Shown here piece by piece: positions 31,974 through 54,742 of a DNA stretch of 64,000 nucleotides. The notes beneath the pieces were generated by a model that was not told where the DNA came from, ran no database searches, and worked only from the letters and a program-made list of their open reading frames with translations. The translations under genes and the position numbers were made by a program. The stretch is taken from positions 158,776-222,775 of the IMG/VR virus record IMGVR_UViG_3300036770_007547; one strand, given 5' to 3'. Positions within the stretch are counted from its first letter, which is position 1. Every line of letters begins with the position of its first letter.

Positions 31974-33005
31974 TTGAACATAATCGGTCTCGATGATGGC
32001 TATCGATTCAAACTCGAAAGCATGCCACGTGGCGCACACAAGTCCCAACCCATAACACATCGTTGCAATCGACCCAGTCGTGTGGTCACTGTGGACTTCA
32101 ACGGCAACTGTCTGGTGTGTAGCTGTGATGGATGGTTACCGGTACCAGTGGGGCAGGTACAAGATTTCAGCACACTGGATTCGGTATGGGCTTCGTCGCG
32201 GGCACAGATGTTGCAACAAGACATAGACCAAGGAAGGTTCACCTGGTGCGCTGTGGAACACTGTGGCATCAAGCACAACGACATTGACCATGGCATGTAC
32301 GAACTCGCCATCAACATCGATGAAAGCTGCAACCTTTCCTGCGCCAGCTGCCGACGTGACACCATCATGCATACCACCGGTGCTGTGGTCGAGAAAAAAC
32401 AACAAGACATGCAGCGCATACTGGAATGGTTGGAGGATTTTGATCGACCTTTGCATGTGGTGACTTCGGGCAACGGAGATCCGTTGGCCAGCGTGGTCAT
32501 GCGTAAATTCCTGCAGAATTATCAACCTCGCCCGGCACAGTTTTGGACCATGTTCACCAACGGACTGTTGATCAAAAAACAGCTGGAACGACTGCCTGTG
32601 CTGGCAGCTATAAAAAATTTCCGCATCAGCGTGGATGCAGCCCGTGCCGACACATATGCTCGCGTGCGTCGCGGTGGACATTGGCCCACGCTCATGGAAA
32701 ACTTTGAATTCCTGCAAAATTTTGACGGCGACTTTGAAGTCACTGTGAATTTTTGTGTGCAACAAGCCAACTATCAAGAGATACCCGAGTTCATCGCACT
32801 GTGCCAAACGCATGGATTCAAGCCACACATACACGAACTCGATGACTGGGGCACCTGGGATCGATTCCACGAACACAATGTGTTGGACCTCCGTCATCCC
32901 GACCATGTGGCTTGTCGGAACATCGTGGAATCCAGCCTGGGTAAAAATCACAAACGTCGATGGTTTTTCAGCACAAGACTCTTGGAGCTATTGTCACTGA
33001 CATGA
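31974..33005 (+). CDS. Radical SAM protein with N-terminal twitch-like Cys domain
   Basis: CNLSCASC (CxxxCxxC); N-terminal C...GNCLVCSC...C...C; GNGDP in place of GGEP; FRISVDAA. Confidence 0.85.
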   Translation: MNIIGLDDGYRFKLESMPRGAHKSQPITHRCNRPSRVVTVDFNGNCLVCSCDGWLPVPVGQVQDFSTLDSVWASSRAQMLQQDIDQGRFTWCAVEHCGIKHNDIDHGMYELAINIDESCNLSCASCRRDTIMHTTGAVVEKKQQDMQRILEWLEDFDRPLHVVTSGNGDPLASVVMRKFLQNYQPRPAQFWTMFTNGLLIKKQLERLPVLAAIKNFRISVDAARADTYARVRRGGHWPTLMENFEFLQNFDGDFEVTVNFCVQQANYQEIPEFIALCQTHGFKPHIHELDDWGTWDRFHEHNVLDLRHPDHVACRNIVESSLGKNHKRRWFFSTRLLELLSLT

Positions 33006-38528: not shown

Positions 38529-39736
38529 TACCGCACGACAAATTTTGCGTGTTGCCCTGGATCAGTCTAGAGACTTCACCTGTGGGCACAGTGCGGCCTT
38601 GCTGTCTGGCCGAACACGAGATCGTGGATGATCTCGGCTGCAAATTCAATCTTGATCGCGCAAATCTCCATGAGATCCAACACAGCGCACACATGCGTCG
38701 ACTGCGACAACAGTTCCTGGACGGTGAGAAACCCACCACATGTCGCAAGTGCTGGAGCGAAGAAGACGCTGGTCGCACCAGCAAACGCATGCACACCTTG
38801 GATCGTCTCAAGCACATCGTCAAAGATGAAGAATGGACTGTGGATGCCCGGCCTTTGATGTTCCTTGATCTCAAGCTGGGCAACATCTGCAATCTCAAAT
38901 GCAGGATCTGCGGATCATGGAGCAGCTCTTCGTTTGCCACTGAAGAAATATCAAACATACCCGATCCGGCATTCCGCAAAAGCAGTGTCCACTATCAGAT
39001 GCTGAAGCAAGGCGCCTGGCCCCGAGAGAATCCCACATTCTGGGCGCAGATCGACGGATTACTAGATCAGATCCGCTACATCGAATTCACCGGCGGTGAA
39101 CCTTTCATGATCCAAGAACACTTTGACATGCTGCAAGGCATGGTGGATCGTGGCATCGCTCACAACGTAGAGATACACTACAATACCAATGGCACACAAT
39201 GGCCCGAGGGTGCCGAAGCGATATGGCAGCACTTCCGGACTGTGGAAATCGCATTCAGCATCGACGATCTTGATCAACGATTCGAATATCAAAGAACCAA
39301 TGCAGCGTGGACCGAAGTCGTGGCCAATCTAAGTCGTTTCCGCGAGCTGCGGTCACGGCACCGGAACATACAGTTACAGGTGTGTAGCACAGTCAACATC
39401 TTCAATGTATGGCACCTCGAAGGCCTGGCCGAATGGATCGACCAGCAGGATTTCGATTTCATTTACTGGAACATGTTACACGAAGCCCGACATTTCAGTA
39501 TATCAGCTCTGCCGCCCGGAGCCAAGATGTTGGCAGCCCAGAGATTGGACACAGCCACAGTCAGCGATTTCCATCGCAGAGAATTTGATTTGATCCGGGA
39601 TTTCATGATGGCCGGAGAAAGCATGCCCGTGGAAACCATCCGCGAACAGATCCGGAGACTGGATCAGCGACGCGACCAGGACTTGAGATCCACGATCTGG
39701 GAATTGGCCGAGGCCCTGGACTATGACCCGACCTGA
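38525..39736 (+). CDS. N-terminal twitch-domain radical SAM protein
   Basis: CVLPW...VRPCC...CRKC; CNLKCRIC; FTGGEPF. Confidence 0.9.
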   Translation: MIPHDKFCVLPWISLETSPVGTVRPCCLAEHEIVDDLGCKFNLDRANLHEIQHSAHMRRLRQQFLDGEKPTTCRKCWSEEDAGRTSKRMHTLDRLKHIVKDEEWTVDARPLMFLDLKLGNICNLKCRICGSWSSSSFATEEISNIPDPAFRKSSVHYQMLKQGAWPRENPTFWAQIDGLLDQIRYIEFTGGEPFMIQEHFDMLQGMVDRGIAHNVEIHYNTNGTQWPEGAEAIWQHFRTVEIAFSIDDLDQRFEYQRTNAAWTEVVANLSRFRELRSRHRNIQLQVCSTVNIFNVWHLEGLAEWIDQQDFDFIYWNMLHEARHFSISALPPGAKMLAAQRLDTATVSDFHRREFDLIRDFMMAGESMPVETIREQIRRLDQRRDQDLRSTIWELAEALDYDPT

Positions 39737-41018
39737 CTCTTTTTGTATGGCACCGTGGACTCACACTTATGTGAGCCCACAGACTGAGCGCAGGATGTGC
39801 TGTGCCAGCCGCGAGCCTGCGCAGAATTTCCAGCAGTACATAGACACAGCCGCAGGCACAGGCCAGTACATCCCCATCACCCTAGACGAACACTGGAACA
39901 GCGATCACATGCGCAGCGTGCGTCGCAGGATGATGGCCGGGGACACCTTGCCTGAATGCGAAGTATGCAACAATCAACTGCTCAACACCGCGGTCTATCG
40001 CGACTATTTCAATCAGCTGTTTGGTCACAAGTATGCGGAGGCCATAGCCAGAACAGACACAGACGGACGCACCGACATGCAGCCCGTGAGCTGGGATTAT
40101 AGATTTTCAAATCTCTGCAATTTCAAATGTAGGATGTGTGGCGACATGCTGAGTTCGAGCTGGGAAACCGAACAGCGCCAGCATGACATGATCGATTGGA
40201 GCAATCCCAAGAACGCTTGGATGCAACCCCACACACGCCAGGAAATAAGTAAGTTCCAAGACACTGTGATCGAGCGCGAGTTCGCTGCGGCAGTGGAACA
40301 ACATCGTGTGGAAGAAGTGTATTGGGTGGGTGGAGAACCGCTCATGTACGAGCAACACTGGCGCTACATGCAACGCATCATTGAACTGGGAGACGGTCCA
40401 CGTGTCTATGCTAGGTATAATACTAATCTTAGTCGTTGCCATTATCGCGGCGTGGATCTTTTTCGCGACATCCTCGATCATTTACGAGATTACCAGATCT
40501 GCGCCAGCCTTGACGGAACTGGAGCCACAGGAGAATACATCCGAACCGGACTGCGCTACGACCAATGGCTTGAAAACTTCCAACGAGGTGTGGACCACCG
40601 AAGACACAGCCGCCAATTTAGACTCGACTTCACGCTCACCCTACCCGGTTTATACGAAGTCGGAAATATACAGGAATTGGCAGACACACACCAAGTAGAA
40701 GTTTTGGCCAAAGTGGTATTCAGTTTCACTCCCGACATCGTCATGAGTCCGCTGTGCTTGCCAAGGTCGTTGCTGGAGCCGAGACTGCGGAGTCTCATGT
40801 CACAAACACACGGGGCCATGCGAGATGTGCTCGAACAATTGATAAAACGTCCCACGTTCCAGGAATCTTGGCCTGACACCTGGCAAATGGGTCTTGCTAA
40901 AGGCAAGGCTCGTGTGTTAAAATTAGAGTCCATACGCAACGACAGTTATACCATGGCCGATATTTTACGCAAGGATCCCGAAGTCCATGAATGGTGGCAA
41001 CAAATCCCAACGCATTGA
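39723..41018 (+). CDS. N-terminal twitch-domain radical SAM protein
   Basis: CMAPW...RMCC...CEVC; CNFKCRMC; WVGGEPL. Confidence 0.9.
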   Translation: MTRPDSFCMAPWTHTYVSPQTERRMCCASREPAQNFQQYIDTAAGTGQYIPITLDEHWNSDHMRSVRRRMMAGDTLPECEVCNNQLLNTAVYRDYFNQLFGHKYAEAIARTDTDGRTDMQPVSWDYRFSNLCNFKCRMCGDMLSSSWETEQRQHDMIDWSNPKNAWMQPHTRQEISKFQDTVIEREFAAAVEQHRVEEVYWVGGEPLMYEQHWRYMQRIIELGDGPRVYARYNTNLSRCHYRGVDLFRDILDHLRDYQICASLDGTGATGEYIRTGLRYDQWLENFQRGVDHRRHSRQFRLDFTLTLPGLYEVGNIQELADTHQVEVLAKVVFSFTPDIVMSPLCLPRSLLEPRLRSLMSQTHGAMRDVLEQLIKRPTFQESWPDTWQMGLAKGKARVLKLESIRNDSYTMADILRKDPEVHEWWQQIPTH

Positions 41019-42060
41019 AATCGATCTCACAGATCATCACGAACACATCATCACTCTCTACATCGATGTGGGAGACACCAGTCTCGGTCACAAATGGTTG
41101 TGCGCCCTAGAGCATTTGATCAGCGGTGAGTATCACCTAGAGAAAAACTACTGTTTCTTGGGATTTCCCGATGGTGCACGCGATGGCAACTACATCCTAG
41201 ATCAAGTCAATCACAGCATACAAGCCATCAACACCGCTGATTTGGGATATCGCATACAGGATCGGTTTGACATGGCCACCATGTTTGAACACCAACCAAG
41301 ACCACGCACCATGCGCCAGGAGCGCATGAATGACTTGCATAGATACTTTGAAGAATTACAGGGCGTGAGTGGTTCCATGAGTGTGTACTATCAAAGGGCC
41401 GATGCTGCCACGCGGTGGCACATCAGACAACTCAATCTCTTGTGTCACGAGTTCGAATCATGGGCATTGAGCTGGCGCAAACAGCTGGAAGCACCAGACT
41501 GGATCCGCCCCAGCCAGCTCATGTGTTGGTTGGGGGCTCCGAGATTCAAGCTCGAACCCCAAGACTTTGAACTGTTTGGGGTCGACACCATAAGTCGCCG
41601 CCTGGGCGGTGTGTATGTGGGTGTGAACAAAGCAGTTGGAAAGCATCACTGGGAAGTGTTCCACGACGAGGGCCGTGACAGCAGGATCGGTGAGTTGACC
41701 ACCACAGTGTTGAAGGGACAGACCGAGGCCGCCGGGGACTTTGACATCGAATGGGGCCGCTATGCCGGGGACCAACCTTGGCAACTGGCCGAGCTGGAGG
41801 CTTTCCGTGATTGGCTGAGAGACAACGGGTTTGATCCCGAAGACAAAAGTCTCACTATCGGTCATCCCTGTGTGGCGCAAGTGGATCTCCAGCGCAGCTT
41901 TGGTTCAGAACATTATCGCGACATTTGGCAGCAATTAAATACGCATCTAAACGTGGCAGAGATACGAACTCCAAATGCAAGAACCACGTACCAGTATCGT
42001 TGGAGCGACACTGGATATGCTCAAAAACAAATTGATGTGATCAGCAAGGAAATGTCATGA
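40987..42060 (+). CDS. Hypothetical protein
   Basis: 357-aa ORF with operon-style overlaps; no motif recognised. Confidence 0.75.
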   Translation: MNGGNKSQRIEIDLTDHHEHIITLYIDVGDTSLGHKWLCALEHLISGEYHLEKNYCFLGFPDGARDGNYILDQVNHSIQAINTADLGYRIQDRFDMATMFEHQPRPRTMRQERMNDLHRYFEELQGVSGSMSVYYQRADAATRWHIRQLNLLCHEFESWALSWRKQLEAPDWIRPSQLMCWLGAPRFKLEPQDFELFGVDTISRRLGGVYVGVNKAVGKHHWEVFHDEGRDSRIGELTTTVLKGQTEAAGDFDIEWGRYAGDQPWQLAELEAFRDWLRDNGFDPEDKSLTIGHPCVAQVDLQRSFGSEHYRDIWQQLNTHLNVAEIRTPNARTTYQYRWSDTGYAQKQIDVISKEMS

Positions 42061-42158
42061 CATGGTTGAAACGATTGATCGGATGGATCAAACTAGAAAT
42101 ACGTTATCGCAGGAAACTGCGCGAGTTACGCAAACGCGACCCTTTCATTTATAAATGA
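42057..42158 (+). CDS. 33-aa highly basic peptide (MTWLKRLIGWIKLEIRYRRKLRELRKRDPFIYK), not in ORF track
   Basis: ATGA overlap with both neighbours; fills the gap exactly. Confidence 0.7.
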   Translation: MTWLKRLIGWIKLEIRYRRKLRELRKRDPFIYK

Positions 42159-43642
42159 ACATACTAGGAATCAGTGCGGGTTTCCATGACGGTTCAGTGA
42201 GCCTGGTGTCCCCGAACGGCGACATATTGTTTGCTGCCCACAGCGAAAGATACAGCCGTGTCAAAAACGATGATGGTATATCACCAGACATGCTGGCCGA
42301 AATCGACGGTACACAAATTGGCACACTGGCCTTTTACGAACGACCTTGGATGCATGGTTTGCAGCGAGCAGTGAGTGGGCAGACTCCTTTGCCACCCTTG
42401 AGCCTATCAGGCACGTTGTCCCAACATCTCAATGGCTGGTATCTGAAAAATGCCGTGGAAGATCGTAGATGCTTCTCGCATCATCTCAGTCATGCCGCTG
42501 CGGGTTTCCAGACATCACCGTTTGATGACGCCACTGTGGTGGTGATAGATGCCATTGGAGAACTTGACACTGTTTCCATCTATCGTGCCTGTTACGATGA
42601 CCAGGGCCAGGCACAGTATCAACGACTGTGGCGGCAAAGGTATCCACACAGCATTGGATTATTCTACAGTGCCGTGACCAAAGCCGTGGGACTCAAGCCC
42701 ATGGAAGAAGAATATATAACCATGGGCATGGCTGCTTATGGCAGCGATCTCGGTGCCGCCTGGATGCGCGAGCATCTCGTCGAGGATCTACAACAAGTGA
42801 GATTCCACAAGAATCTGCACATTGGATTCGATGAATACGAGTTGCCATTCACCCACAACGAAGATATCGCGGCTTCGGCCCAGGCCCTGACCGAGCAGTT
42901 GATCATGTCAGTGATGCGACGTGCTCGCGATCTCACCGGTGGTGGCAATCTCGTTTACATGGGTGGTGTGGCCTTGAATTGCCTGGCCAATCGTTTGTTG
43001 GGAGACTATTTTGATGACATTTGGATCATGCCCAATCCCGGAGATGCTGGATCGAGTCTTGGTGCAGCCGCTCTTGCTTATGGTCAGCGCCTGCGCTGGC
43101 GTGACCCTTATCTTGGTCACACTATCACTGGCGATTATCCTGTTCGTGCCCTACTCGATGATCTTGCTGACGGGGGTATTGCTGCTGTGGCTAGCGGACC
43201 AGCTGAGTTTGGTCCTCGTGCCCTAGGCAACCGTAGTCTATTAGCAGATCCTCGCGGAGAGGATATCAAGGATAGAGTCAATGAAATTAAGCGACGTCAA
43301 AAATTTAGACCCTTTGCCCCGGTCATACTGGCCGAGATGGTCAATGACTACTTTGATATGCCACCTGTTTGGCACCGCAGCGATTACATGCAAGTGGTCG
43401 CCCGGTGCCGTCGCCCTGATCTTTTTCCTGCTATATGTCATGTTGATGGCACCAGCCGAGTACAGACAGTTCCAAAGAATTCGCGATCGGGCATCCGCCA
43501 ACTCCTAGAACAATGGTATGCCCAGACCGGCTGTCCCATGTTATTGAACACCAGTCTCAATGTGCGCGGGGAACCCATGATCAACACTCGAGACGATGCT
43601 GATAGATTCACTAGATTTTACGGCGTGCCCGTGAGATCATAG
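42155..43642 (+). CDS. Carbamoyltransferase (NodU/CmcH/TobZ family)
   Basis: HDGSV, ERYSRVK, HHLSHAA, DAIGE, GGVALNC, GDAGSSLGAA, EFGPRALGNRS, RPFAP, HVDGTSRVQTV, LLNTSLN. Confidence 0.95.
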   Translation: MNILGISAGFHDGSVSLVSPNGDILFAAHSERYSRVKNDDGISPDMLAEIDGTQIGTLAFYERPWMHGLQRAVSGQTPLPPLSLSGTLSQHLNGWYLKNAVEDRRCFSHHLSHAAAGFQTSPFDDATVVVIDAIGELDTVSIYRACYDDQGQAQYQRLWRQRYPHSIGLFYSAVTKAVGLKPMEEEYITMGMAAYGSDLGAAWMREHLVEDLQQVRFHKNLHIGFDEYELPFTHNEDIAASAQALTEQLIMSVMRRARDLTGGGNLVYMGGVALNCLANRLLGDYFDDIWIMPNPGDAGSSLGAAALAYGQRLRWRDPYLGHTITGDYPVRALLDDLADGGIAAVASGPAEFGPRALGNRSLLADPRGEDIKDRVNEIKRRQKFRPFAPVILAEMVNDYFDMPPVWHRSDYMQVVARCRRPDLFPAICHVDGTSRVQTVPKNSRSGIRQLLEQWYAQTGCPMLLNTSLNVRGEPMINTRDDADRFTRFYGVPVRS

Positions 43643-44659
43643 ATAGGTTTCCAGTGGCCCACGACGACGTATGTCCTGGGTCACACAAGAAATCCCGCCA
43701 TCCCAAAAGTATCGATGCCGCAAAGGAGCGATTATGGGTTCGATCCTGTGGCGTTGACAGAACTCAAACACTTCTTTGTTGTAGCTGGAAAATATCACAT
43801 GATGCTCGTCGAGCACCAGGCAGTTGACATCAAACACAGTTTCGCTGACAAATCCGGTCCAGTGCGAGAGATACTGATCCACATAAGCAGCAAAGGCCGG
43901 ATCATCGTGGCTGCCTTCCACCCACCATCTTCCATTGAACGAAGACTCTTTGAATTGTCCCACGGCCAAGCTGGCTTCGATGTTGCTGAGTGGTACACGG
44001 CAAACTTCCCAGCCCGGGAACGTGTCTCGATAATTGATGTCAGCATCGTGTTTGCTTGACAATATCACTCCGGGTCGCAATATGGCAAACACAGCATCTC
44101 CGTGACCGTTGGTCTGACAACGGCGCACACGGAACCTTGAATCCAATGCATGCTGTTGTATCCACTCCATCTGCTGACTGGTCATGTATTCGCTGTTGTC
44201 AAACAGCACATCGGTGCCAACTCGAACTATGCAGCTGGCCACAGCGCCCGCCATCACAGCATCACGTGCCTGCAACACCGAGCCCGGTTGTAAACGCTGA
44301 TATTCGGTGATGATTCCGTTGTACTCGTAGTCATCGTTGAATCGCAACAAACGCTCGCCCAGGGTTATCTGTGTGTCTCTGGGGGTTATGGGTGGAGTAG
44401 GTGGACGCATGCCACGCGACAGCATGTCCTGGAAACTGAGAACTCCGGTGGGTTCAGGTCTGCGCACCCGGGCACCGAATCTTTGTATGACTCGAGCCAG
44501 ATTGTCCAGGTCTTCTTCGGTCTCTTCCATGATACGCTGTAGTTGTTTGCGTACCCGGCGGTCCGGTATCGAAGAAAAATGTTTTTTGCTATAGACGCGC
44601 CCCACTATCACTTCTTCCAAGGGCTGCCAACTGGTGTAAGATTGTACGGTCAATTCCAT
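43637..44659 (-). CDS. Amidinotransferase (glycine/inosamine-phosphate amidinotransferase-like)
   Basis: SWQPLEEVIVGR, PRD, HGD, FDVNCL and C-terminal GGISCVTQD (candidate catalytic Cys): pentein fold. Confidence 0.88.
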   Translation of the reverse strand: MELTVQSYTSWQPLEEVIVGRVYSKKHFSSIPDRRVRKQLQRIMEETEEDLDNLARVIQRFGARVRRPEPTGVLSFQDMLSRGMRPPTPPITPRDTQITLGERLLRFNDDYEYNGIITEYQRLQPGSVLQARDAVMAGAVASCIVRVGTDVLFDNSEYMTSQQMEWIQQHALDSRFRVRRCQTNGHGDAVFAILRPGVILSSKHDADINYRDTFPGWEVCRVPLSNIEASLAVGQFKESSFNGRWWVEGSHDDPAFAAYVDQYLSHWTGFVSETVFDVNCLVLDEHHVIFSSYNKEVFEFCQRHRIEPIIAPLRHRYFWDGGISCVTQDIRRRGPLETYL

Positions 44660-45840
44660 GTCAGGCTTTCAAGTAAGCTATTTAAACGCGGAGTGAGATC
44701 TCCGGTGAATAATCTCTGATTGTGTTCGAGATCAGGCCAACAGCGTTGATACCAATCGCGTAGATTTTTTTGTTGCATGATACCTTGTATGGCATCAAAC
44801 ACCTTCTCCCAGCGACGGTTGTTGTCAAGTTCTTGATCGTAGCTGTTGTCGATCACAGAATCAAACGTGCGGTAACCTAGACCTCTCAAGGCAGACAAGG
44901 TACCAGCAGCACCAAATATCACGAAAGGCTGTGCATGCTTGATGGGCTTGAAGGTTTTTTCTGTGACAAAGGCTCCCCGAGATCCGTCTGCGTCAAAGTG
45001 TGTCTCGAGTACGACCTGGAAGTAGCTGTTGGTGTAGTGTTCGCGCACATGGTGTGTGTGATCATTGTGCGCCTGATGATCCAAGGCATCGGCCCGGTAA
45101 GGACCGTTTTCCATGAATAGCTCGAGGCTTTGCTTCAGCCCCGGACGATACCAGAAACGTATGGGGTTGTCGGTAAAAGGTTCGTCTAGGGCCACTTGGG
45201 TGTTGTAGCTCCATATGGCTCGTTGCAACCATCCACGGCGCTGCATTTCGGTCATGGTAGTGGCCCGCCACCATTTGTGTGTGCGTACCAAGCTGGTGAA
45301 CGCATGCGGTCTTTTTCTTTTGTTGTCCGGAGCCACAGCCGGATGTTGTTGATTGCGCAAACGGAACAACAGCTCGTCGTCGGCAAAGTAACGACAGTTT
45401 TGCATGGTACTGGCCTCGGTGTTGGCCGATATCAATATCACACTTTCTGGTGGCAATGAATTGTTGAGGCATTGTTGATCCAGGCTCTGTCTTATACGGC
45501 CGGGATTGTCGCCTTCGCTGTAGAATATCAGTATCTTCACACGACACTGTTGACATAGCTGTTTCACTGCCTGGGGCACGAGATCGAGATGCTGTGTGTC
45601 ATGATCGAAAAATGTGAGAGCTATGGGATAGAACGCCTGATGTCTGACTTGATCATGAGTGATGGCTCTTACTGCTATGCCATGCACACGGCAATATTCA
45701 TAAAACATCACCGGCTCGCTCCAAGGCCAATGCTGGCTGAATTGATGCCACTCGGGTGTGTATGGTCGGGCCTGCCATCGTGCGATGTTTGGTGCTGGCC
45801 TTGCTTGATCCCAGACATGATCAAAAACAAAATCAATCAT
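44650..45840 (-). CDS. GT-B-like (GT10/exostosin-like) putative glycosyltransferase
   Basis: Likely start ATG 45840 (MIDFVFD). YFQVVLET...FVTEKTFKP...PF...LRGLGYRTF..VIDNSYD. Confidence 0.5.
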   Translation of the reverse strand: MIDFVFDHVWDQARPAPNIARWQARPYTPEWHQFSQHWPWSEPVMFYEYCRVHGIAVRAITHDQVRHQAFYPIALTFFDHDTQHLDLVPQAVKQLCQQCRVKILIFYSEGDNPGRIRQSLDQQCLNNSLPPESVILISANTEASTMQNCRYFADDELLFRLRNQQHPAVAPDNKRKRPHAFTSLVRTHKWWRATTMTEMQRRGWLQRAIWSYNTQVALDEPFTDNPIRFWYRPGLKQSLELFMENGPYRADALDHQAHNDHTHHVREHYTNSYFQVVLETHFDADGSRGAFVTEKTFKPIKHAQPFVIFGAAGTLSALRGLGYRTFDSVIDNSYDQELDNNRRWEKVFDAIQGIMQQKNLRDWYQRCWPDLEHNQRLFTGDLTPRLNSLLESLTWN

Positions 45841-46939
45841 TGAAATCTCGTCGCATTTTTTCCAGCATGCATGAAACTTCGTCCCATAACACACGTTCAA
45901 AGCCGCCACCATAAAAATGTCGATGATTGTGTTCGATCACTGGCAAGCAGCGTTGGTACATGTCGTTGAGTTGTTGATGATCCAGGCTGTCCATCCAACA
46001 CAACAGTTGCGATATCTTTGATAACCTCACAGCATCGTCGACTTCGCTGTCATAGCTTTCGTCCCAGACGTCATGAAAGGTGTGGAATCCATATCTGCGA
46101 AGATATTCGAGACTGCCAGCACAGCTTACCATCACAAACGGCATCTTGAGGCAGATGGGTTTGAATGTTTTTTCAGTGAGATGCTGTCGTGTGCCGCTGA
46201 ACACAGTTTCTGTGATCACGTAGGCTAGACTACTCGCAGTCTCGTGGAATTGTGTGAGACAATAGCTTTTCATGGGATGCCCGGTTTCCCCGGAAAAATT
46301 CCAGGGCAGTTGGGCTTGTCGTACCAGCTCACGTGCCTGGTCCCCGCCCAGGGCATGTGCTAGATCCAGCACAGACTGGCCCTCTACGGGACATTGATCC
46401 GGAAAGCTGATACAGGCATTGTGGACGTTGTGTTCCAACAGTTTCAGCAAAAGTCGCACTCGATGTTCGCGGCGTCCCCCGACTATGCGATTGGCACTGA
46501 AAAAACTGTGAGTTATATCCCGCTTGTTGGGGTCGGTGATCAACCATGTGCGGTCGTAGCCACGGAACCAATCCAAAGCAGCCCATCCGTGGAAAAAATA
46601 ATAGTAGTCTTTGAGGCGGTATCTTTCACACAGTTCACGCACATTGTCGCTTTGGTATTCGCTGTGTATCATGGCTCGATGCCTGGGACCTATCCTGTGA
46701 TTGAGATCACGATTGCGGATCTGTAGATCATCAAACAGCGGAGCATGCATGTCCAAATATATTGGCTCTTGATCGTGAAAGTAAGTATAATTTAGTTCAA
46801 AGCCATTGGCTGCGACCTTGACGAGATTTTCGGGTCGTGAGCTACCAAACGGATCGCAATAAAACATGCGTGTGGCGGGAACATGTTTCTGTATATAGGG
46901 CCAGAACAGGTAATGATAGATTTCATCGATCTTGATCAT
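45833..46939 (-). CDS. GT-B-like (GT10/exostosin-like) putative glycosyltransferase
   Basis: AYVITET...HLTEKTFKP...PF...LRRYGFHTF..VWDESYD. Confidence 0.5.
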   Translation of the reverse strand: MIKIDEIYHYLFWPYIQKHVPATRMFYCDPFGSSRPENLVKVAANGFELNYTYFHDQEPIYLDMHAPLFDDLQIRNRDLNHRIGPRHRAMIHSEYQSDNVRELCERYRLKDYYYFFHGWAALDWFRGYDRTWLITDPNKRDITHSFFSANRIVGGRREHRVRLLLKLLEHNVHNACISFPDQCPVEGQSVLDLAHALGGDQARELVRQAQLPWNFSGETGHPMKSYCLTQFHETASSLAYVITETVFSGTRQHLTEKTFKPICLKMPFVMVSCAGSLEYLRRYGFHTFHDVWDESYDSEVDDAVRLSKISQLLCWMDSLDHQQLNDMYQRCLPVIEHNHRHFYGGGFERVLWDEVSCMLEKMRRDFND

Positions 46940-48533
46940 GTTTGACGTTTTTTACATCAGTGAACCCACGGGATTGTTCCCACACGAAAAACCAGCGCGG
47001 GATCTAGAACATGCCAGACAGCAGTCTCGCACCCGATATTTATGGGTGGTCCATGGTGCCAATGATTATAGCACGTTTGACTGGTACTGGGAGCCACCGC
47101 CTGGACAGAAACACCAAGCACATGTGTGGCCCAGTCAACATCAAGCCAATGGAGGCACATGGTTGATACCACGCGAAGGTTATCAAGACATCAATCGCGA
47201 TCATGCAACCATAACACGCTGCAAGTCTGTGCCCAGGCTACACATCAAGCATTCATCCAGTGCCGATGTCGGTGATGTCAACACACGCTATATTGGTTCT
47301 TATCTGGGCACCTTGCGACGAGCCTTGTCTCACGTGACATGGACCTGGTGCTGGGTCACTGCCGATGTGTGTGACTATCAACATTTTGATTTCACTTGGC
47401 ATCCCAGTGAATGGCAAGATCACATGTTGTCTGTGTTTGCCAGTGGTTCTCAAAAGTTCGGAGACACATTCTATGTGCATGTGCCCACGTTCTTGGAAAA
47501 AAGCCAGAACCTAGCTCTGTTGGAGTGGTTCGACACCTTGAATTTCATACAAGATCCCTGTGTTCCTCGACATGCTGTGCCACGCATCAAGTATCACAGC
47601 GATTCCGTGGTACCGGCAGTGCTCGCACATGATTTTTCACAGCCAATCGCGGAATTCTATTGCCAACAACCGGCCACCAAGCTCGTGGATCTCAATCTTT
47701 GGCGCGATGAAACCAAAGCAGTGACTCTGTTGCGCACCGGGGGGACCAGTGTGTTGGTGCCACGTGAAGCCAAAAATCATCTGCGCACACAGATGTATGA
47801 CTATCCTGTGATAGATCGAGGCCAGGACCTAGAACCTTCAGAGGCATTGGACATCGTGTACATCTCCAACGGAGAACCCGACGCTGATCGAAACTGGGCC
47901 AGCCTGATGTTGCGCAAACAAGGACAGCCCAACCGCTTGGTGCGGGTGGATCGAGTGCCAGGTCGTGCTGCTGCCTATCATGCTGCTGCTCGAGCCAGTG
48001 AGACGCCGTGGTTCTTTGCTGTGTTTGCCAAGCTGGATGTGCTGGCCGACTTTGATTGGTCGTGGCAGCCGGATCGCCTGCAACAGCCCAAGCACTATAT
48101 CTTCCATGCACTCAATCCCGTGAACATGCTGGAATACGGGCACCAGGCCATGATCGCCTACAATCGTGATCTAGTGTTGGCCAATCCCGGTCGTGGTCTG
48201 GACTTTACCTTGGATGACGCACACGAAGTGGTGCCCATACTGTCGGGCGTGGCACGCTACAACACCGATGCCTGGACTGCTTGGCGTACTGCTTTCCGAG
48301 AAGTGATCAAACTGCAGGCCAGCCTGCCCGATGTCGAAAACGAATATCGCTTGCGCCAATGGTTGACCAAGGGACAAGGTCCCTATGGCGAATGGTCAGT
48401 GTACGGTGCCGAGGATGGCGTGGCCTACTACCAAGAAGTTGCGGGAGATTTTGATGAACTGCGCAAGAGCTACGAGTGGTCCTGGTTGGCCAGTTACTTG
48501 TTCTTCAAACGTGGGATTTCACCGACTCGGTGA
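46938..48533 (+). CDS. Multi-domain glycosyltransferase-like protein
   Basis: ATG 46938 (MFDVFY). C-terminal domain (DIVYISNGEP...AAYHAAARAS...AWRTAFREVIK) resembles 31044-31973. Confidence 0.5.
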   Translation: MFDVFYISEPTGLFPHEKPARDLEHARQQSRTRYLWVVHGANDYSTFDWYWEPPPGQKHQAHVWPSQHQANGGTWLIPREGYQDINRDHATITRCKSVPRLHIKHSSSADVGDVNTRYIGSYLGTLRRALSHVTWTWCWVTADVCDYQHFDFTWHPSEWQDHMLSVFASGSQKFGDTFYVHVPTFLEKSQNLALLEWFDTLNFIQDPCVPRHAVPRIKYHSDSVVPAVLAHDFSQPIAEFYCQQPATKLVDLNLWRDETKAVTLLRTGGTSVLVPREAKNHLRTQMYDYPVIDRGQDLEPSEALDIVYISNGEPDADRNWASLMLRKQGQPNRLVRVDRVPGRAAAYHAAARASETPWFFAVFAKLDVLADFDWSWQPDRLQQPKHYIFHALNPVNMLEYGHQAMIAYNRDLVLANPGRGLDFTLDDAHEVVPILSGVARYNTDAWTAWRTAFREVIKLQASLPDVENEYRLRQWLTKGQGPYGEWSVYGAEDGVAYYQEVAGDFDELRKSYEWSWLASYLFFKRGISPTR

Positions 48534-49587
48534 TGTATTCGACTTCGAGGTCAGTGAGCTCGGGATAAAAAGGCAAGCTCAATACACGACGGCTCAGCGC
48601 ACTGGCCGAACTCAGGAATCCCGGCCCCGGAAACTGATGGAACTCGGGTATTTCGTGCAACGGAGTACGATAATGCACACGGGCCTCGATGTGGGCCTGC
48701 AAAAGCGATTGCTCCAAGTCATCGCGATGATCCACATCGATCACAAACTTGTGCAAGGCATGTTCGTGTAAATTGTGTTCGGTGATCAAACAGCGCATGG
48801 ATCCTCGGAACTCTTTGATCCAATGTTCGGCGATCTTGGCCCGGCGTTGTTGCCATTGGTCCAGATACCTAGTCTTGACCATGAGATGCGCGGCATCTAT
48901 TTCACTGATGCGACTGTTTGTACCCCAAGTGCGATGACGGTTGTATTTGCCATTGTCGCGCCAAGCCCGTGCATAGTCGGCCAGTCTGGGATCGTTGGTG
49001 ACCACGGCACCACCGTTTCCGTATGCACTGAGATTTTTCATGGGATCAAAACTGATGGCAGCACCAGATCCGATCCTGCCACAATCGTCACTGATCCAAT
49101 GCTGGGCAGCATCTTCTATCACAGCGATGTGAGTGAATTTTTGCCAATCTCGCACCGAACCATGGTGTGTGATTGGATGTCCATAAAGCCCGACCAGACA
49201 CATGGCATTGATGCTGGAACGATCTGGAAGTTTTCTGAGATCCATGATACCGTCTGAATCCACATCGCACAATATCACATCCCAGCCCGCTCGCAGCCAG
49301 GCATTGATGGTGGCCACATATGTCATGGAAGGCACAGCCACCGTGGGTTGGGCGTCGGTTGTTTCGTGTCGCAAGAATTCAGCGATGATTTCCAGGGCTT
49401 GTGTGCCTGAATGACAGGTTATGGCCCATTTGCATCGATTTTTTCGTGCCAGCCAGTGTTCAAACTCTTCGGTCCAGTTTCCACTCATGACCTGCCCAGA
49501 TCTCAACACCTCATCGGTGACATCCAGGATTTCCTGGCGCAAGTTGTTGTACTGTTTCTTGATTCCAGTGAACGGGATTTTGATCAT
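48505..49587 (-). CDS. DegT/DnrJ/EryC1/StrS PLP-dependent sugar aminotransferase
   Basis: CHSGTQAL, IEDAAQ, SFDPMKNLSAYGNGG (PLP lysine), NSRISEIDAA, LSLPFYP. Confidence 0.93.
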   Translation of the reverse strand: MIKIPFTGIKKQYNNLRQEILDVTDEVLRSGQVMSGNWTEEFEHWLARKNRCKWAITCHSGTQALEIIAEFLRHETTDAQPTVAVPSMTYVATINAWLRAGWDVILCDVDSDGIMDLRKLPDRSSINAMCLVGLYGHPITHHGSVRDWQKFTHIAVIEDAAQHWISDDCGRIGSGAAISFDPMKNLSAYGNGGAVVTNDPRLADYARAWRDNGKYNRHRTWGTNSRISEIDAAHLMVKTRYLDQWQQRRAKIAEHWIKEFRGSMRCLITEHNLHEHALHKFVIDVDHRDDLEQSLLQAHIEARVHYRTPLHEIPEFHQFPGPGFLSSASALSRRVLSLPFYPELTDLEVEYITESVKSHV

Positions 49588-49593
49588 GATCGG

Positions 49594-50580
49594 TCACAAT
49601 GCCAGTCGTTGACGCCAGTAATCGCTGTTGATGATCCAGTTGTGATAGATTTGGAATCCTTGGTCAATGTCGACTTTGGGATTGAAATCCAGTAGTTGCT
49701 GTGCTAGAGTGATGTCGAGTCTTCCGCGACTGGGAAAATCCTGATCACGATCGCGCACTTCGATGTCACCACGGCCCACTAGTTTTTGTGCCAGTTGAGC
49801 TGCTTCTAGCAGTGTCCATGCATGACTCTTGGTTATGTTGAAGGTGTGATTGTTGGCTTGATCTCTCAGGCACGCAGCCACGATGCCATCGGCAGCATCA
49901 TCCACGTAGGTAAAATCCAAGCGCTCGTTGGCACCGTTGACGCGTATGGTTTCTCCGCGCATGGCAGTGATCAAGAAACGACTGATCACGCGATCCTCCA
50001 CGTCCAAGGGTCCGTATACTGCACTGGGACGGATCACCACATGCGCCATTCCATACTTGCGGGTGTAATCTCGCACCAACCATTCGCCGGCCAGCTTCAT
50101 GATGCCGTATTGACCTTGTGGACGGCATTCGGCATCTTCGGTCACTGCATCACGGAAGTCGCCATAGACCATGCTGGATGATATGTAAACAAACTTTTTC
50201 ACGCCCGACAGTCTCGCTGCTTCCAAGAGATTCAAAAGACCTTCCATCATGGTACGCGAGCCCAGCGCCGGCGCAGCATTCACCACTTTCTGTCTCGGGA
50301 AACTGGCCATGTGTATCACAGTGTCGGGCTGTTCTTGGCGAAACACATAATCCACATTGTGTGACACAGAGATATCGCCCACATACAATGGTGTATCGGG
50401 TGCGATGCGTTTTTCTCTTTCTTGGAACAGATACTGCATCTCATCTTCGGGTATGATACCGTAGTTGGTTTTGTTGTCCATGACCGTGGTCCAATGTCCC
50501 AGTGCTTGCAGACGATTCACCACATTGTGACCGATGAGACCAAGCCCACCTGTAACTAAGATTTTTCTTGATTGTTCCAT
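49594..50580 (-). CDS. NAD-dependent NDP-sugar epimerase/dehydratase (extended SDR)
   Basis: VTGGLGLIG (GxxGxxG), SSSMVYG, YGIMK (YxxxK), RPSAVYGP, DFTYVDD. Confidence 0.93.
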   Translation of the reverse strand: MEQSRKILVTGGLGLIGHNVVNRLQALGHWTTVMDNKTNYGIIPEDEMQYLFQEREKRIAPDTPLYVGDISVSHNVDYVFRQEQPDTVIHMASFPRQKVVNAAPALGSRTMMEGLLNLLEAARLSGVKKFVYISSSMVYGDFRDAVTEDAECRPQGQYGIMKLAGEWLVRDYTRKYGMAHVVIRPSAVYGPLDVEDRVISRFLITAMRGETIRVNGANERLDFTYVDDAADGIVAACLRDQANNHTFNITKSHAWTLLEAAQLAQKLVGRGDIEVRDRDQDFPSRGRLDITLAQQLLDFNPKVDIDQGFQIYHNWIINSDYWRQRLAL

Positions 50581-50807
50581 CTCAAGTAGTACTCCGTGAC
50601 TTTTCGTGGATCTGAAATTTCGCCTCGTATGGCCACATCATATCCCCAGTAATTTTCATCGGGTTGTGTATGATAGGTGAGATTGTGCGCATGCTCCATG
50701 ACCCATCGTCCTTGCTCGGTCTGTTGCCACTGGTATATGGGTTGTGCCGCATAGATGTCTACATCATCTACATCGCCCAGATTGAAGCGATAGAAAGTGA
50801 TCTTCAC
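50556..50807 (-). CDS. Hypothetical protein
   Basis: 83-aa ORF overlapping both neighbours in the - strand operon. Confidence 0.7.
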   Translation of the reverse strand: MKITFYRFNLGDVDDVDIYAAQPIYQWQQTEQGRWVMEHAHNLTYHTQPDENYWGYDVAIRGEISDPRKVTEYYLRWNNQEKS

Positions 50808-51487
50808 GATTGTACGAAATCAGAAACCATGGGAAAGATACGTGAAATGGCCTCTGCACAGGCCCGAGCCACTTCTTGATGCTCTCGTTGTGTGCCATTG
50901 GCACTCCTGAGCTCGATGAAATGTGCCCATGATCTCAGGGTACCATTCATGTAGATCCTGCTTTCGATCAATCCCTCGGGCAACACGGCACGAGCCTGTT
51001 CCTTGGCGATGCCTTTGGTGATGGCCCATTCGTAGTTGCGTCGAGCCAGTTCGATCACTTCGAGTTGTTTTATGTGCCAGGTCTTGGCCAGCTCTTGCGC
51101 TTCGATATCGGAATCATCGATGCTGATGCTGTTTTGCCGATTCTTTTGATCCTGCATGCGTAGCTCGCGCACTGTGAAATCTAGATCACGTGTGGGGTCG
51201 GCATACCTTTGGCTGAACTCTTGGAACGAGAAACTGCGATGTCTCAGTATCTGCCGTGCGATGTCTCGAGTGGTAGTGATTTCCATGCAGGCCGACACCA
51301 TTTCTAACGGACTCCAATGCTGATGTTTTACCAGGTAGCGTATGAGACGTTCCGAGGTCTCGGTGTTGAACTGATTGGCTGGATTGGAAACACGGGCACA
51401 GTACGCGATGAGTTCTTGTGCATCCGAGATGCCTTGATCTGCAAATTCAGTGCAAGGCTGTGAATAAGAAACCAGGCGTACTTTCAT
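50804..51487 (-). CDS. thyX: FAD-dependent thymidylate synthase
   Basis: AYCARVSNP, HWSPLE, RHRSFSFQEFSQRY (ThyX motif RHRx7SxR), EQARAVLP, QREH. Confidence 0.96.
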   Translation of the reverse strand: MKVRLVSYSQPCTEFADQGISDAQELIAYCARVSNPANQFNTETSERLIRYLVKHQHWSPLEMVSACMEITTTRDIARQILRHRSFSFQEFSQRYADPTRDLDFTVRELRMQDQKNRQNSISIDDSDIEAQELAKTWHIKQLEVIELARRNYEWAITKGIAKEQARAVLPEGLIESRIYMNGTLRSWAHFIELRSANGTQREHQEVARACAEAISRIFPMVSDFVQS

Positions 51488-54740: not shown

Positions 54741-54742
54741 CC

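What the first reader, a model, noticed from the sequence alone, without database searches (positions are those of the whole stretch)
42155..50580. Amidinotransferase, carbamoyltransferase, DegT and SDR: route to a guanidino/carbamoyl aminosugar
Seen: all four enzymes retain recognisable catalytic motifs; the carbamoyl- and amidino-transferase genes converge tail-to-tail with a 6-nt overlap. Known: this chemistry parallels streptomycin/bluensomycin biosynthesis (StrS-type aminotransferase, StrB1 amidinotransferase, carbamoylation). Phage carbamoyltransferases have also been shown to act on 5-hydroxymethylcytosine. Inference: an aminoglycoside-like sugar as a glycan residue, or even a small molecule (aminoglycosides can inhibit phage infection, so a superinfection-exclusion role is conceivable).
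Basis: partly seen in the sequence, partly recalled or inferred. Interest (0 to 1): 0.68.

Follow-up and report, generated by a model that had tools for sequence, protein, structure and literature searches.

The report
Jumbo-phage sugar-tailoring and glycosyltransferase island
The four enzymes are real, but they are only part of a roughly 19-kb gene island, conserved in hundreds of uncultured 340-kb phages, that most likely builds an unusual decorated sugar chain rather than modifying DNA or making an antibiotic.

Summary
All four genes sit at the stated coordinates, and the 6-nt tail-to-tail overlap is real. The carbamoyltransferase, DegT aminotransferase and SDR keep their catalytic motifs. 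The amidinotransferase-like protein has no Pfam hit but matches AGAT, StrB1, SxtG and HsvA. It keeps the Cys, the His and both guanidino-binding Asp, but not the triad Asp. The SDR lacks the 4,6-dehydratase Asp-Glu pair, so it looks like an epimerase or oxidoreductase.

Between and beside the four genes lie:
- three paralogous GT-B glycosyltransferases;
- one multi-domain GT-A glycosyltransferase;
- six radical SAM enzymes with an N-terminal twitch domain;
- two conserved proteins of unknown function.

This order is kept in most of 80 fetched loci, out of at least 576 viral matches. The complete relatives are 337-345 kb T4-like jumbo myophages, and none is cultured.

Five complete relatives lack Thymidylat_synt and Tet_JBP hits. 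Four of them, plus the window's own record, lack TGT. The 5hmC reading is therefore disfavoured. No nucleotidyltransferase or Wzx/Wzy-type multi-pass protein was found. The best reading is cytoplasmic glycan assembly from host nucleotide sugars onto a phage or host acceptor. The product and acceptor are unknown.

The parts
31974..33005 (+). radical SAM enzyme a (weak N-twitch type)
   Evidence: Pfam Radical_SAM plus SPASM. NF033640 scores 43 bits, below its cut-off. It has Cx3Cx2C at residue 119.
32960..34393 (+). N-twitch radical SAM enzyme b
   Evidence: NF033640 scores 309 bits, over the cut-off. It has Cx3Cx2C plus four N-terminal Cys.
34260..35510 (+). GT-B glycosyltransferase paralogue 3 (x416); the true start is probably further in
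   Evidence: hhalign against the P2/P3 family profile gives probability 99.5%, E 1.4e-22, and shares the TETV...TEK...GFRTF...DESFD block.
35503..36840 (+). N-twitch radical SAM enzyme c
   Evidence: NF033640 scores 296 bits. It is 49% identical to a gene about 2 kb upstream of the carbamoyltransferase of Ralstonia phage RsoM2USA.
36789..38528 (+). N-twitch radical SAM enzyme d, with about 175 extra N-terminal residues
   Evidence: NF033640 scores 386 bits. Pfam SPASM plus Radical_SAM.
38525..39736 (+). N-twitch radical SAM enzyme e
   Evidence: NF033640 E 5e-99. No solved relative scores below E 0.01.
39723..41018 (+). N-twitch radical SAM enzyme f
   Evidence: NF033640 E 1e-85.
40987..42060 (+). 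conserved protein of unknown function (x357), always next to the carbamoyltransferase
   Evidence: Present in 71 of 80 loci in the same position. No Pfam, PHROG or NCBIfam hit. Unrelated to the GT-B family.
42155..43642 (+). NodU/CmcH-family O-carbamoyltransferase (Kae1-like plus YrdC-like domains)
43637..44659 (-). amidinotransferase-clade guanidino-group-modifying enzyme (P0001)
44650..45840 (-). GT-B glycosyltransferase paralogue 2 (P0002). The longest ORF reaches 45912; the likely start is Met25 at 45840.
   Evidence: It aligns with P0003 in family alignment A3. The ESM Atlas holds it from residue 25, and its structure matches phage proteins fused to an Epimerase domain.
45833..46939 (-). 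GT-B glycosyltransferase paralogue 1 (P0003)
   Evidence: AlphaFold2 model with pLDDT 91.7. All top solved matches are GT-B enzymes: T4 beta-glucosyltransferase Z 10.7, PDB 6eji Z 10.1, alpha-1,3-fucosyltransferase Z 9.8, T4 alpha-glucosyltransferase Z 9.8.
46938..48533 (+). multi-domain GT-A-like glycosyltransferase (P0004) with three copies of a ~65-aa FDxxWxP module
   Evidence: AlphaFold2 model with pLDDT 91.9. Nearly all Foldseek PDB hits are GT-A glycosyltransferases: LH3 at 7e-5, PcManGT, mimivirus R699, ArnC, K4CP and PBCV-1 A64R. The repeat count varies among homologues.
48505..49587 (-). DegT/DnrJ/EryC1/StrS-family PLP sugar aminotransferase
   Evidence: Pfam 4e-62. The best solved relatives are 7b0d, DesV, QdtB, 5u1z and WbpE; several of these are C-3 aminotransferases by my own recollection. 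Lys184 is invariant.
49594..50580 (-). extended SDR of GalE/epimerase type, not a 4,6-dehydratase
50556..50807 (-). small conserved ORF (x83) between ThyX and the SDR
   Evidence: Present in 54 of 80 loci at the same place. No family hit is known.
50804..51487 (-). canonical ThyX flavin-dependent thymidylate synthase. It is the upstream gene on the SDR-DegT strand and is probably not part of the pathway.
   Evidence: Pfam Thy1 2e-43. The RHRSFSFQEFSQRY motif is intact.

Best explanation
The four enzymes belong to a conserved island of about 19 kb and 16 genes (window 31974-50807, ending beside ThyX). It lies just downstream of the baseplate and tail-fibre genes of an uncultured T4-like jumbo myophage.

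Proposed working, all of it inferred:
1. The phage takes nucleotide sugars from the host, because it encodes no sugar nucleotidyltransferase.
2. The GalE-type SDR oxidises or epimerises a sugar, and the DegT enzyme aminates a keto sugar.
3. The amidinotransferase-like enzyme moves an amidino group, presumably from arginine, onto an amine.
4. The NodU/TobZ-type enzyme O-carbamoylates a hydroxyl using carbamoyl phosphate and ATP.
5. The six N-twitch radical SAM enzymes carry out further, unknown tailoring.
6. The three GT-B enzymes and the GT-A enzyme assemble the product on an acceptor reachable from the cytoplasm. Virion proteins are the most likely acceptor.

Shown here: the enzyme families, their intact active-site residues, the glycosyltransferase folds, the conservation and gene order, and the lack of hits to three families that begin known DNA hypermodifications.

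Inferred: the substrates, the order of steps, that the amidino and carbamoyl groups end up on a sugar, and the acceptor.
For: - Enzyme families and motifs.
- Glycosyltransferase folds: high-confidence models give GT-B for P0003 and GT-A for P0004. There is a third GT-B paralogue. The GT-B family occurs fused to NDP-sugar epimerase and UGDH domains in other phages.
- Conserved order: ThyX-x83-SDR-DegT | P4 | P3-P2-AmidT | CarbT-x357-rSAM f/e/d/c-GT-B-rSAM b holds in most of 80 loci from at least 576 viral matches. It also holds on 98-353 kb metagenome contigs.
- Accessory insertions tie the parts together. A second amidinotransferase paralogue (27% identity; PRD, GHSD and GGWHC kept) sits between SDR and DegT in L087, and also in L033. 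Extra SDR and GT-B copies sit among the radical SAM genes.
- A distant cyanophage homologue lies beside KdsA, KdsB and a glycosyltransferase, and it was detected in that phage's virion proteome (PMC12801897).
- No PF00483 nucleotidyltransferase in the window's record or in five complete relatives.
- The only multi-pass membrane proteins in the record are SSF and MFS transporters more than 120 kb away.
- Baseplate hub, baseplate wedge and fibre-like genes lie directly upstream on the same strand.
Against: - No substrate, product or acceptor is known, and no member of the clade is cultured.
- The SDR-DegT pair is dispensable where AmidT and CarbT persist (L039 and L041).
- In distant phages CarbT and AmidT associate with a radical SAM gene rather than with sugar enzymes. 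They may therefore act on something other than the aminosugar.
- The amidinotransferase-like family lacks the AGAT Asp254 equivalent, so its chemistry may differ.
- Adjacency to tail genes is weak evidence for the acceptor.
- GT-B matches with Z of 8-11 show the fold, not the specificity. The two T4 DNA glucosyltransferases are among the top ties.
Confidence: 0.5

Rival explanations
1. The island remodels the host envelope. It alters a host surface polysaccharide (O-antigen, capsule or S-layer glycan) at the cytoplasmic face, using the host's lipid carrier and export machinery. The changed receptor then blocks superinfection.
For: - A comparative review of jumbo phages reads cyanophage sugar and glycosyltransferase clusters this way (PMC7824862).
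- Soluble GT-A and GT-B enzymes commonly act on lipid-linked intermediates (established knowledge).
- The accessory content of the island varies between relatives, as expected for receptor diversification.
Against: - No multi-pass membrane protein that could serve as flippase or polymerase was seen in the 223-kb record; the only two are SSF and MFS transporters. Priming-transferase, Wzx and Wzy families were not searched directly.
- The core of the island is strictly conserved across a very wide clade. That fits a phage-intrinsic function better than a host-specific one.
- Nothing indicates lysogeny, although this was not examined in depth.
Confidence: 0.2
2. The radical SAM enzymes, the carbamoyltransferase and the amidinotransferase act directly on virion proteins. 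Examples would be lysine amidination, Ser/Thr/Cys carbamoylation, or radical SAM cross-links and epimerisation. The glycosyltransferases add sugars separately. The island would then be a protein post-translational modification factory.
For: - The rSAM-CarbT-AmidT trio recurs without SDR or DegT in marine virus AG-345-D19, and the rSAM-CarbT pair recurs in Ralstonia phage RsoM2USA.
- SPASM and twitch radical SAM enzymes are typically peptide maturases (PMC11002830).
- Members of the Kae1/YrdC-type carbamoyltransferase superfamily carbamoylate a protein (HypF) and tRNA (own knowledge).
- A 4986-aa protein and fibre-like genes lie upstream.
Against: - No precursor peptide or recognition domain was identified.
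- The closest solved relatives of CarbT and AmidT all act on small molecules.
- Extra SDR and GT-B paralogues are interleaved with the radical SAM genes in relatives, which points to sugar chemistry.
Confidence: 0.12
3. The island hypermodifies DNA. The carbamoyltransferase and the GT-B enzymes, and perhaps the amidinotransferase, decorate a modified base, as in 5-carbamoyloxymethylcytosine or T4 glucosyl-hmC.
For: - A phage carbamoyltransferase of this Pfam architecture makes 5cmdC from 5hmdC in vitro (PMC8670742).
- The T4 beta- and alpha-glucosyltransferases are among the top structural ties of P0003.
- In RsoM2USA the homologous CarbT lies between a DNA ligase and a helicase.
- The host phage is T4-like.
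Against: - No Thymidylat_synt hit (control genomes positive) in the window's record or in five 95-100% complete relatives.
- No Tet_JBP hit either, but the control was silent, so this result is weak.
- No TGT/DpdA hit in the window's record or in four complete relatives.
- ThyX has the canonical motif.
- In the MetaGPA study, carbamoyltransferases on unmodified contigs were the ones flanked by glycosyltransferases.
- SDR and DegT have no role in any known base modification.
Confidence: 0.08
4. The island makes a diffusible aminoglycoside-like metabolite. This is the reader's second idea: a guanidino- and carbamoyl-bearing pseudo-oligosaccharide that acts as an antibiotic or an anti-phage compound.
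For: - Every family here has a counterpart in aminoglycoside pathways: StrB1, StrS/BtrS-type DegT, the twitch radical SAM BtrN, TobZ and GT-B enzymes (pathway roles from own knowledge).
- The top solved DegT hit is deposited as a glutamine--scyllo-inositol transaminase.
Against: - No exporter or resistance gene lies in or near the island.
- The similarities are at family level only. The NCBIfam equivalog scores fall far below their cut-offs.
- There is no evident benefit for a lytic jumbo phage.
Confidence: 0.07

Closest known systems
Virus-encoded glycosylation machineries: mimivirus fibril aminosugar clusters, chlorovirus PBCV-1 A64R, and mycobacteriophage virion glycosylation (own knowledge for the biology; R699 and A64R structures hit)
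   Same: The virus carries its own NDP-sugar tailoring enzymes (SDR plus DegT-type aminotransferase) and soluble GT-A and GT-B transferases. It has no lipid-carrier export system. The genes lie near structural genes.
   Different: This island adds an amidinotransferase, a NodU-type carbamoyltransferase and six N-twitch radical SAM enzymes, which none of those systems has. The sugar nucleotides are not made by the virus. The acceptor has not been shown.
Jumbo cyanophage sugar and carbamoyltransferase clusters described by comparative genomics (PMC7824862)
   Same: Jumbo phages carry multi-gene clusters with paralogous glycosyltransferases. A second type of cluster has NodU/CmcH-like carbamoyltransferases and is predicted to make a sugar-derived product. 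Carbamoyltransferase homologues at 26-31% identity occur in Synechococcus, Prochlorococcus and Pelagibacter phages.
   Different: Those clusters have sugar kinases, nucleotidyltransferases, halogenase and 2OG oxygenases. They are sporadic and polymorphic. This island has a fixed core in a different phage lineage from non-marine samples (subsurface, lagoon), with radical SAM enzymes and an amidinotransferase.
Streptomycin, bluensomycin and nebramycin tailoring enzymes (StrB1, StrS, TobZ)
   Same: The enzyme families match: StrB1 at 1e-13, TobZ at 3e-30, and the DegT/StrS family. Conceptually, all put amino, guanidino and carbamoyl groups on a carbohydrate.
   Different: No export or resistance gene was seen, and a cyclitol synthase was not searched for. 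Identity is low. The amidinotransferase lacks the StrB1 Asp179 equivalent. The host is a phage, and four glycosyltransferases point to a polymer or glycoconjugate.
Phage 5-hydroxymethylcytosine carbamoyltransferase (MetaGPA study, PMC8670742)
   Same: The same two Pfam domains, in a phage.
   Different: That enzyme co-occurs with a ThyA-like dCMP hydroxymethylase. No such gene was found here or in complete relatives. The neighbours here are sugar enzymes. The two sequences were not compared directly, because the published sequence exists only as printed letters and was left out.
Amidinotransferase plus O-carbamoyltransferase pairs in cyanobacterial guanidine-alkaloid clusters (SxtG with SxtI)
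   Same: SxtG is among the solved relatives of P0001. Such clusters pair this family with a NodU/CmcH carbamoyltransferase (own knowledge).
   Different: None of the 20 island and flanking proteins scanned matched a polyketide-like starter enzyme or another gene specific to that pathway. The resemblance is limited to the two tailoring families.

Membership tests
Amidinotransferases (AGAT/StrB1 clade of the guanidino-group-modifying enzyme superfamily) | Significant sequence similarity over the whole fold to characterised amidinotransferases and not to the hydrolases of the superfamily | tested here: met
   AGAT 1.7e-15, StrB1 1.3e-13, SxtG and HsvA match; no arginine deiminase or DDAH appears even at E up to 10. 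The family profile gives 2e-20.
Amidinotransferases (AGAT/StrB1 clade of the guanidino-group-modifying enzyme superfamily) | Nucleophilic Cys (AGAT C407), His (H303) and the two guanidino-binding Asp (D170, D305) | tested here: met
   C325, H186, D95 and D188 are invariant in 83 family members.
Amidinotransferases (AGAT/StrB1 clade of the guanidino-group-modifying enzyme superfamily) | Triad Asp (AGAT D254, StrB1 D179) | tested here: not met
   It aligns with Val140 here and with Ser in 73 of 83 relatives. The flanking block (IVRVGTDV against FIRAGRDI) aligns without gaps. No 3D model was made, so a spatial substitute cannot be excluded.
Amidinotransferases (AGAT/StrB1 clade of the guanidino-group-modifying enzyme superfamily) | Match to the curated family model | tested here: not met
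   No Pfam or NCBIfam hit at E up to 0.01. The only hit is PHROG 25854, of unknown function.
Amidinotransferases (AGAT/StrB1 clade of the guanidino-group-modifying enzyme superfamily) | Arginine-dependent amidino transfer to an amine | not testable with these tools
   This needs an enzyme assay.
NodU/CmcH/TobZ O-carbamoyltransferases | Kae1-like N domain plus YrdC-like C domain, with the metal-binding His motif and the carbamoyl-phosphate/ATP motifs | tested here: met
   Both Pfam domains score over their cut-offs. HHLSHA, FGPRALG, FRPFAP and NTSLN are present, and the residues checked within them are invariant in 74 homologues.
DegT/DnrJ/EryC1/StrS sugar aminotransferases | Fold-type I PLP enzyme with the Schiff-base Lys and the Asp that binds the pyridine nitrogen | tested here: met
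   Pfam 211 bits against a cut-off of 19.8. K184 and D159 are invariant. Regiospecificity is not resolved: every NCBIfam equivalog score is far below its cut-off.
NDP-hexose 4,6-dehydratases (RmlB type) | Catalytic Asp-Glu pair after the active-site Thr (TDE), in addition to YxxxK | tested here: not met
   The query has SSSMVYG at that position. TIGR01181 scores 124 bits against a cut-off of 365. The TDE motif is recalled from my own knowledge.
Extended SDR (GalE-like epimerase/oxidoreductase) | GxxGxxG, a Ser/Thr, and YxxxK | tested here: met
   GGLGLIG, S134-S136 and Y158/K162 are conserved in 65-69 of 69 homologues.
GT-B glycosyltransferases | Two Rossmann-like domains with an inter-domain cleft | tested here: met
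   The P0003 model has pLDDT 91.7. Nearly all top solved matches are GT-B enzymes, Z 8-10.7 over 230-290 residues. The CAZy family is unresolved; GT10 is only a weak lead.
GT-A glycosyltransferases | Single Rossmann-like nucleotide-binding domain, usually with DxD | tested here: inconclusive
   The P0004 model has pLDDT 91.9. Nearly all Foldseek hits are GT-A enzymes (best 7e-5), but TM scores are low because the protein has several domains. A DxD motif was not identified.
5hmC carbamoylation system (MetaGPA) | A ThyA-like dCMP hydroxymethylase in the same genome | tested here: not met
   PF00303 is absent from the 223-kb record and from five relatives that are 95-100% complete; the control rang in 10 of 14 genomes.
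Aminoglycoside biosynthetic gene cluster | Cyclitol-forming enzyme (2-deoxy-scyllo-inosose or inositol-phosphate synthase) plus a resistance or export gene | not tested
   No specific family search was run. None of the island proteins matched such families in the Pfam, NCBIfam or PHROG scans.

The most novel reading that the evidence does not exclude
The island makes a glycan carrying guanidino (N-amidino) and O-carbamoyl sugars, further altered by radical SAM chemistry, and attaches it to the tail or baseplate proteins of a very widespread clade of uncultured jumbo phages. It would be the first guanidino-sugar glycoconjugate known to me and a new kind of virion decoration. The recurrent trio of N-twitch radical SAM, carbamoyltransferase and amidinotransferase would be a previously unrecognised phage tailoring module.
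Probability: 0.2. Interest if true: 0.8.

Novelty: new variant of a known kind. Interest (0 to 1): 0.55.

Why it matters
Virus-encoded glycosylation is well documented in giant viruses and in a few phages. Its chemistry and purpose in jumbo phages are almost unexplored.

This island is fixed in a clade with at least 576 matches among IMG/VR viral contigs. It combines enzyme families not seen together in any described glycan pathway. These include a phage-specific branch of the amidinotransferases that curated family models miss, and a six-fold expansion of an uncharacterised radical SAM family.

Working out the product would assign functions to several large families of phage 'hypothetical proteins'. 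It could also reveal new sugar chemistry and a new layer of phage-host recognition or immune evasion.

Tried and rejected
- **DNA similarity to cultured phages:** a megablast of the region against 50,697 phage records found nothing. tblastn of P0003 also found nothing. P0001 matched only four distant records.
- **Profile searches of the solved-structure sequences:** the P2/P3 and P4 family profiles gave no hits. Single-sequence searches gave none either. The folds came only from predicted structures.
- **Bacterial genomes:** the scan for the amidinotransferase family returned a single locus. It is a phage contig binned into a Haliscomenobacter MAG, so it gives no bacterial pathway context and at most a weak host hint.
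- **Promoter and terminator scans** across the island were at chance level.
- **Literature searches** for this gene combination in phages found no description.
- **Sequencing runs:** the search found only the probable source sample (subsurface metagenome) and one small-share lagoon run. No RNA run was found.
- **Distant loci L002-L004** (34% identity) showed no sugar context: a TctA transporter and methyltransferases.
- **x357 and the 309-aa ORF at 31044-31973** are not GT-B paralogues.
- **Considered and rejected:**
  - SDR as a 4,6-dehydratase: the residues are missing.
  - ThyX as a disguised hydroxymethylase: the motif is canonical and there is no precedent.
  - A 7-deazaguanine pathway: no TGT/DpdA.
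- **Not done:**
  - Direct comparison with the published 5hmC carbamoyltransferase. Its sequence is available only as printed letters, so it was left out.
  - A structure model of the amidinotransferase. The two fold jobs went to the unknown proteins.
  - The large representative-protein search. It was not needed.
  - A complex prediction. No binding claim is made.

Full report
**Where the window lies.** The window is the last 64 kb of a 222,775-bp linear IMG/VR virus record that CheckV rates 64% complete. The record encodes gp32-like, UvsX/RecA-like and T4-type terminase proteins. It also encodes gp5-like hub and gp6-like wedge baseplate proteins, followed by a 4986-aa ORF and fibre-like proteins. 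Its terminase is about 54% identical to those of the jumbo phages PA5oct and Atu_ph07, and about 52% to that of Phosso. It is therefore a distant T4-like jumbo myophage. The best-matching public run is labelled a subsurface metagenome.

**Check of the observation.** ORFs occupy exactly the stated positions.
- The carbamoyltransferase (42155-43642, +) has both Pfam carbamoyltransferase domains. It matches NovN, GdmN and TobZ. Its metal-binding and carbamoyl-phosphate/ATP motifs are conserved, and the residues checked within them are invariant in 74 homologues.
- The converging gene (43637-44659, -) gets no hit from Pfam or NCBIfam. It matches the solved amidinotransferases AGAT, StrB1, SxtG and HsvA at 1e-11 to 1e-15, or 2e-20 with a family profile. 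No hydrolase of the same superfamily appears.
- The equivalents of AGAT Asp170, His303, Asp305 and Cys407 are invariant in 83 family members. The third triad residue, Asp254 (StrB1 Asp179), is replaced by Val here and by Ser in most relatives.
- The two stop codons abut as TCATAG, which gives the reported 6-nt overlap.
- DegT (48505-49587, -) and the SDR (49594-50580, -) are clear family members with invariant catalytic residues.
- The SDR carries SSSMVYG where 4,6-dehydratases have Thr-Asp-Glu and decarboxylases have Ser-Glu. It scores far below the dehydratase equivalog cut-off. It therefore resembles GalE-type epimerases or oxidoreductases, not the dehydratase a streptomycin-like route would need.

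**What lies between and beside the four genes.**
- The three ORFs between the amidinotransferase and DegT had no family hits.
- P0002 and P0003 are paralogues. A 62-sequence alignment gave an AlphaFold2 model of P0003 at pLDDT 91.7. Its solved-structure matches are almost all GT-B glycosyltransferases, Z 8 to 10.7.
- In other uncultured phages the same family is fused to NDP-sugar epimerase or UDP-glucose dehydrogenase domains. That ties the family to nucleotide sugars.
- A third paralogue sits among the radical SAM genes at 34260-35510 (hhalign probability 99.5%).
- P0004 modelled at pLDDT 91.9 and hits almost only GT-A glycosyltransferases.
- Upstream on the + strand, running into the carbamoyltransferase, are six radical SAM genes. 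Five exceed the cut-off of NCBIfam NF033640, the N-terminal twitch-domain radical SAM family. All six have Cx3Cx2C and four N-terminal cysteines.
- A conserved protein of unknown function (x357) also lies there.
- The functional unit is therefore about 19 kb and 16 genes (31974-50807), ending beside ThyX, not four genes.

**Conservation.**
- The amidinotransferase-like protein has more than 2,200 homologues in the word-indexed protein collection. The top ones are about 60% identical.
- A pattern scan of IMG/VR confirmed at least 576 viral matches.
- In the 80 loci fetched, the order ThyX-x83-SDR-DegT | P4 | P3-P2-AmidT | CarbT-x357-rSAM f, e, d, c-GT-B-rSAM b is kept almost everywhere the contig reaches. 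It is also kept on metagenome contigs of 98 and 353 kb.
- Complete relatives are 337-345 kb, two of them with terminal repeats.
- No cultured phage has the island.
- Variation between relatives is informative. Two relatives carry a second amidinotransferase paralogue between SDR and DegT. Others carry extra SDR or GT-B copies among the radical SAM genes. These insertions link the sub-blocks.
- On the other hand, two relatives lack SDR and DegT yet keep the amidino- and carbamoyltransferases.
- In a distant marine phage the trio radical SAM-CarbT-AmidT recurs, with no SDR or DegT on that short contig. In cultured Ralstonia phage RsoM2USA the radical SAM-CarbT pair recurs about 2 kb apart, with three DUF6071 genes around it.
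- The linear SDR, DegT, AmidT, CarbT pathway is therefore plausible but not obligatory.

**Tests of the alternatives.**
Six-frame HMM searches found no Thymidylat_synt in the record or in five 95-100% complete relatives, while the controls rang.
- No Tet_JBP was found either, but its control was silent, so this result is weak.
- No TGT/DpdA was found in the record or in four complete relatives.
- The neighbouring ThyX has the canonical RHRxxS motif.
- In the study that discovered 5hmC carbamoyltransferases, those enzymes co-occurred with ThyA homologues. Carbamoyltransferases on unmodified contigs sat next to glycosyltransferases (PMC8670742), as here. DNA modification is therefore unlikely, though not excluded.
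- No PF00483 nucleotidyltransferase exists in the record or in the relatives, so sugar nucleotides must come from the host.
- The only multi-pass membrane proteins in the record are SSF and MFS transporters far from the island. Nothing suggests lipid-linked export or secretion of a metabolite.

**Most likely working.** The island tailors host nucleotide sugars and assembles a decorated glycan in the cytoplasm. The steps would be oxidation or epimerisation, transamination, amidino and carbamoyl transfer, and unknown radical SAM steps. Four soluble glycosyltransferases would attach the glycan to an acceptor. Virion proteins are the favoured acceptor for three reasons:
- The island directly follows the baseplate and fibre genes.
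- Its core is fixed across the clade.
- There is precedent in giant viruses and some phages (own knowledge).

A distant cyanophage homologue of the amidinotransferase lies among KdsA, KdsB and glycosyltransferase genes. It was detected in purified virions. Host-envelope remodelling, direct protein modification, DNA modification and a diffusible aminoglycoside-like product remain as rivals, in decreasing order of likelihood.

**Comparison with known systems, and novelty.** At family level the enzymes resemble StrB1, StrS and TobZ of aminoglycoside pathways. In logic the island resembles the glycosylation clusters of giant viruses and the sugar and carbamoyltransferase clusters noted in jumbo cyanophages (PMC7824862). 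It differs in four ways:
- It combines an amidinotransferase branch that curated models miss with a carbamoyltransferase.
- It has a six-fold expansion of an uncharacterised radical SAM family.
- It has four glycosyltransferases.
- It lacks any nucleotidyltransferase.

I rate it a new variant of a known kind. The genes and their conservation are solid; the chemistry and the target are inferred.

**Limits.**
- No structure was predicted for the amidinotransferase.
- The published 5hmC carbamoyltransferase sequence was not compared, because it exists only as printed letters.
- Expression is untested, since no RNA run holds the stretch.

Noticed in passing
window 46938-48533 and homologues in L009-L088: P4 homologues range from 513 to 1784 aa in steps of about 65 aa. 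They carry tandem arrays of a module with the motif [FWY]D[FWY]xWxP, from 1 to at least 11 copies. The window's protein has three. This is copy-number variation of a domain inside a putative glycosyltransferase.
   Followed up: partly
window 46937-46940: The divergent genes P3 (-) and P4 (+) share the palindrome CATG, so their two ATG start codons overlap by 2 nt. That leaves no intergenic space for promoters. P4 and DegT also converge with a 29-nt overlap.
   Followed up: no
G000 C1:1935-3056, 8953-10200, 71420-72613 and window 31974-41018: Eight NF033640 (N-terminal twitch radical SAM) paralogues score above the cut-off in the 223-kb record, and three more score below it. No member of this family appears to be characterised, and no solved relative scores below E 0.01.
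   Followed up: partly
window 10413-25373: A single 4986-aa ORF follows the gp5-like hub and gp6-like wedge genes. It is presumably a giant baseplate or fibre protein and a candidate acceptor for the island's product.
   Followed up: no
G000 C1:76181-83568 (L091 8181-15568): A sodium:solute symporter, an MFS transporter and two AMP-binding (acyl-adenylate-forming) enzymes are interleaved with the gp32-like and UvsX genes and lie near the terminase gene. These are unusual auxiliary genes for a phage.
   Followed up: no
L089 (NZ_JBBAKG010000003.1, 148 kb, labelled Haliscomenobacter sp. MAG): This contig of a bacterial MAG carries the whole island in the same order, from x231 to rSAM c. It is evidently a jumbo-phage contig binned with the MAG. 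That means contamination, or at most a weak host hint.
   Followed up: partly
L094 (Ralstonia phage RsoM2USA, record 123467-130403): This cultured 344-kb phage has an N-twitch radical SAM gene (49% identical to rSAM c), three DUF6071 paralogues and a carbamoyltransferase (45% identical). They lie between a DNA ligase and a helicase, and all are annotated as hypothetical. It is the only cultured handle on part of the module.
   Followed up: partly
L093 (Marine virus AG-345-D19, MH319727) 3-5371: A distant marine phage has a radical SAM gene, a carbamoyltransferase (52% identical), two unknown ORFs and an amidinotransferase homologue within 5.4 kb. Three contigs of this virus carry amidinotransferase homologues.
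   Followed up: partly
L039/L041 5050-5919 and 11387-12804: In these relatives a 289-aa protein of unknown function takes the place of SDR and DegT. A ferredoxin-reductase-like FAD/NAD protein and another unknown protein are inserted between the amidinotransferase and the carbamoyltransferase.
   Followed up: partly
window 52771-55831: A DUF2201 metallopeptidase/VWA protein and a MoxR-like AAA ATPase lie just beyond the island. The DUF2201 gene is syntenic in relatives.
   Followed up: no
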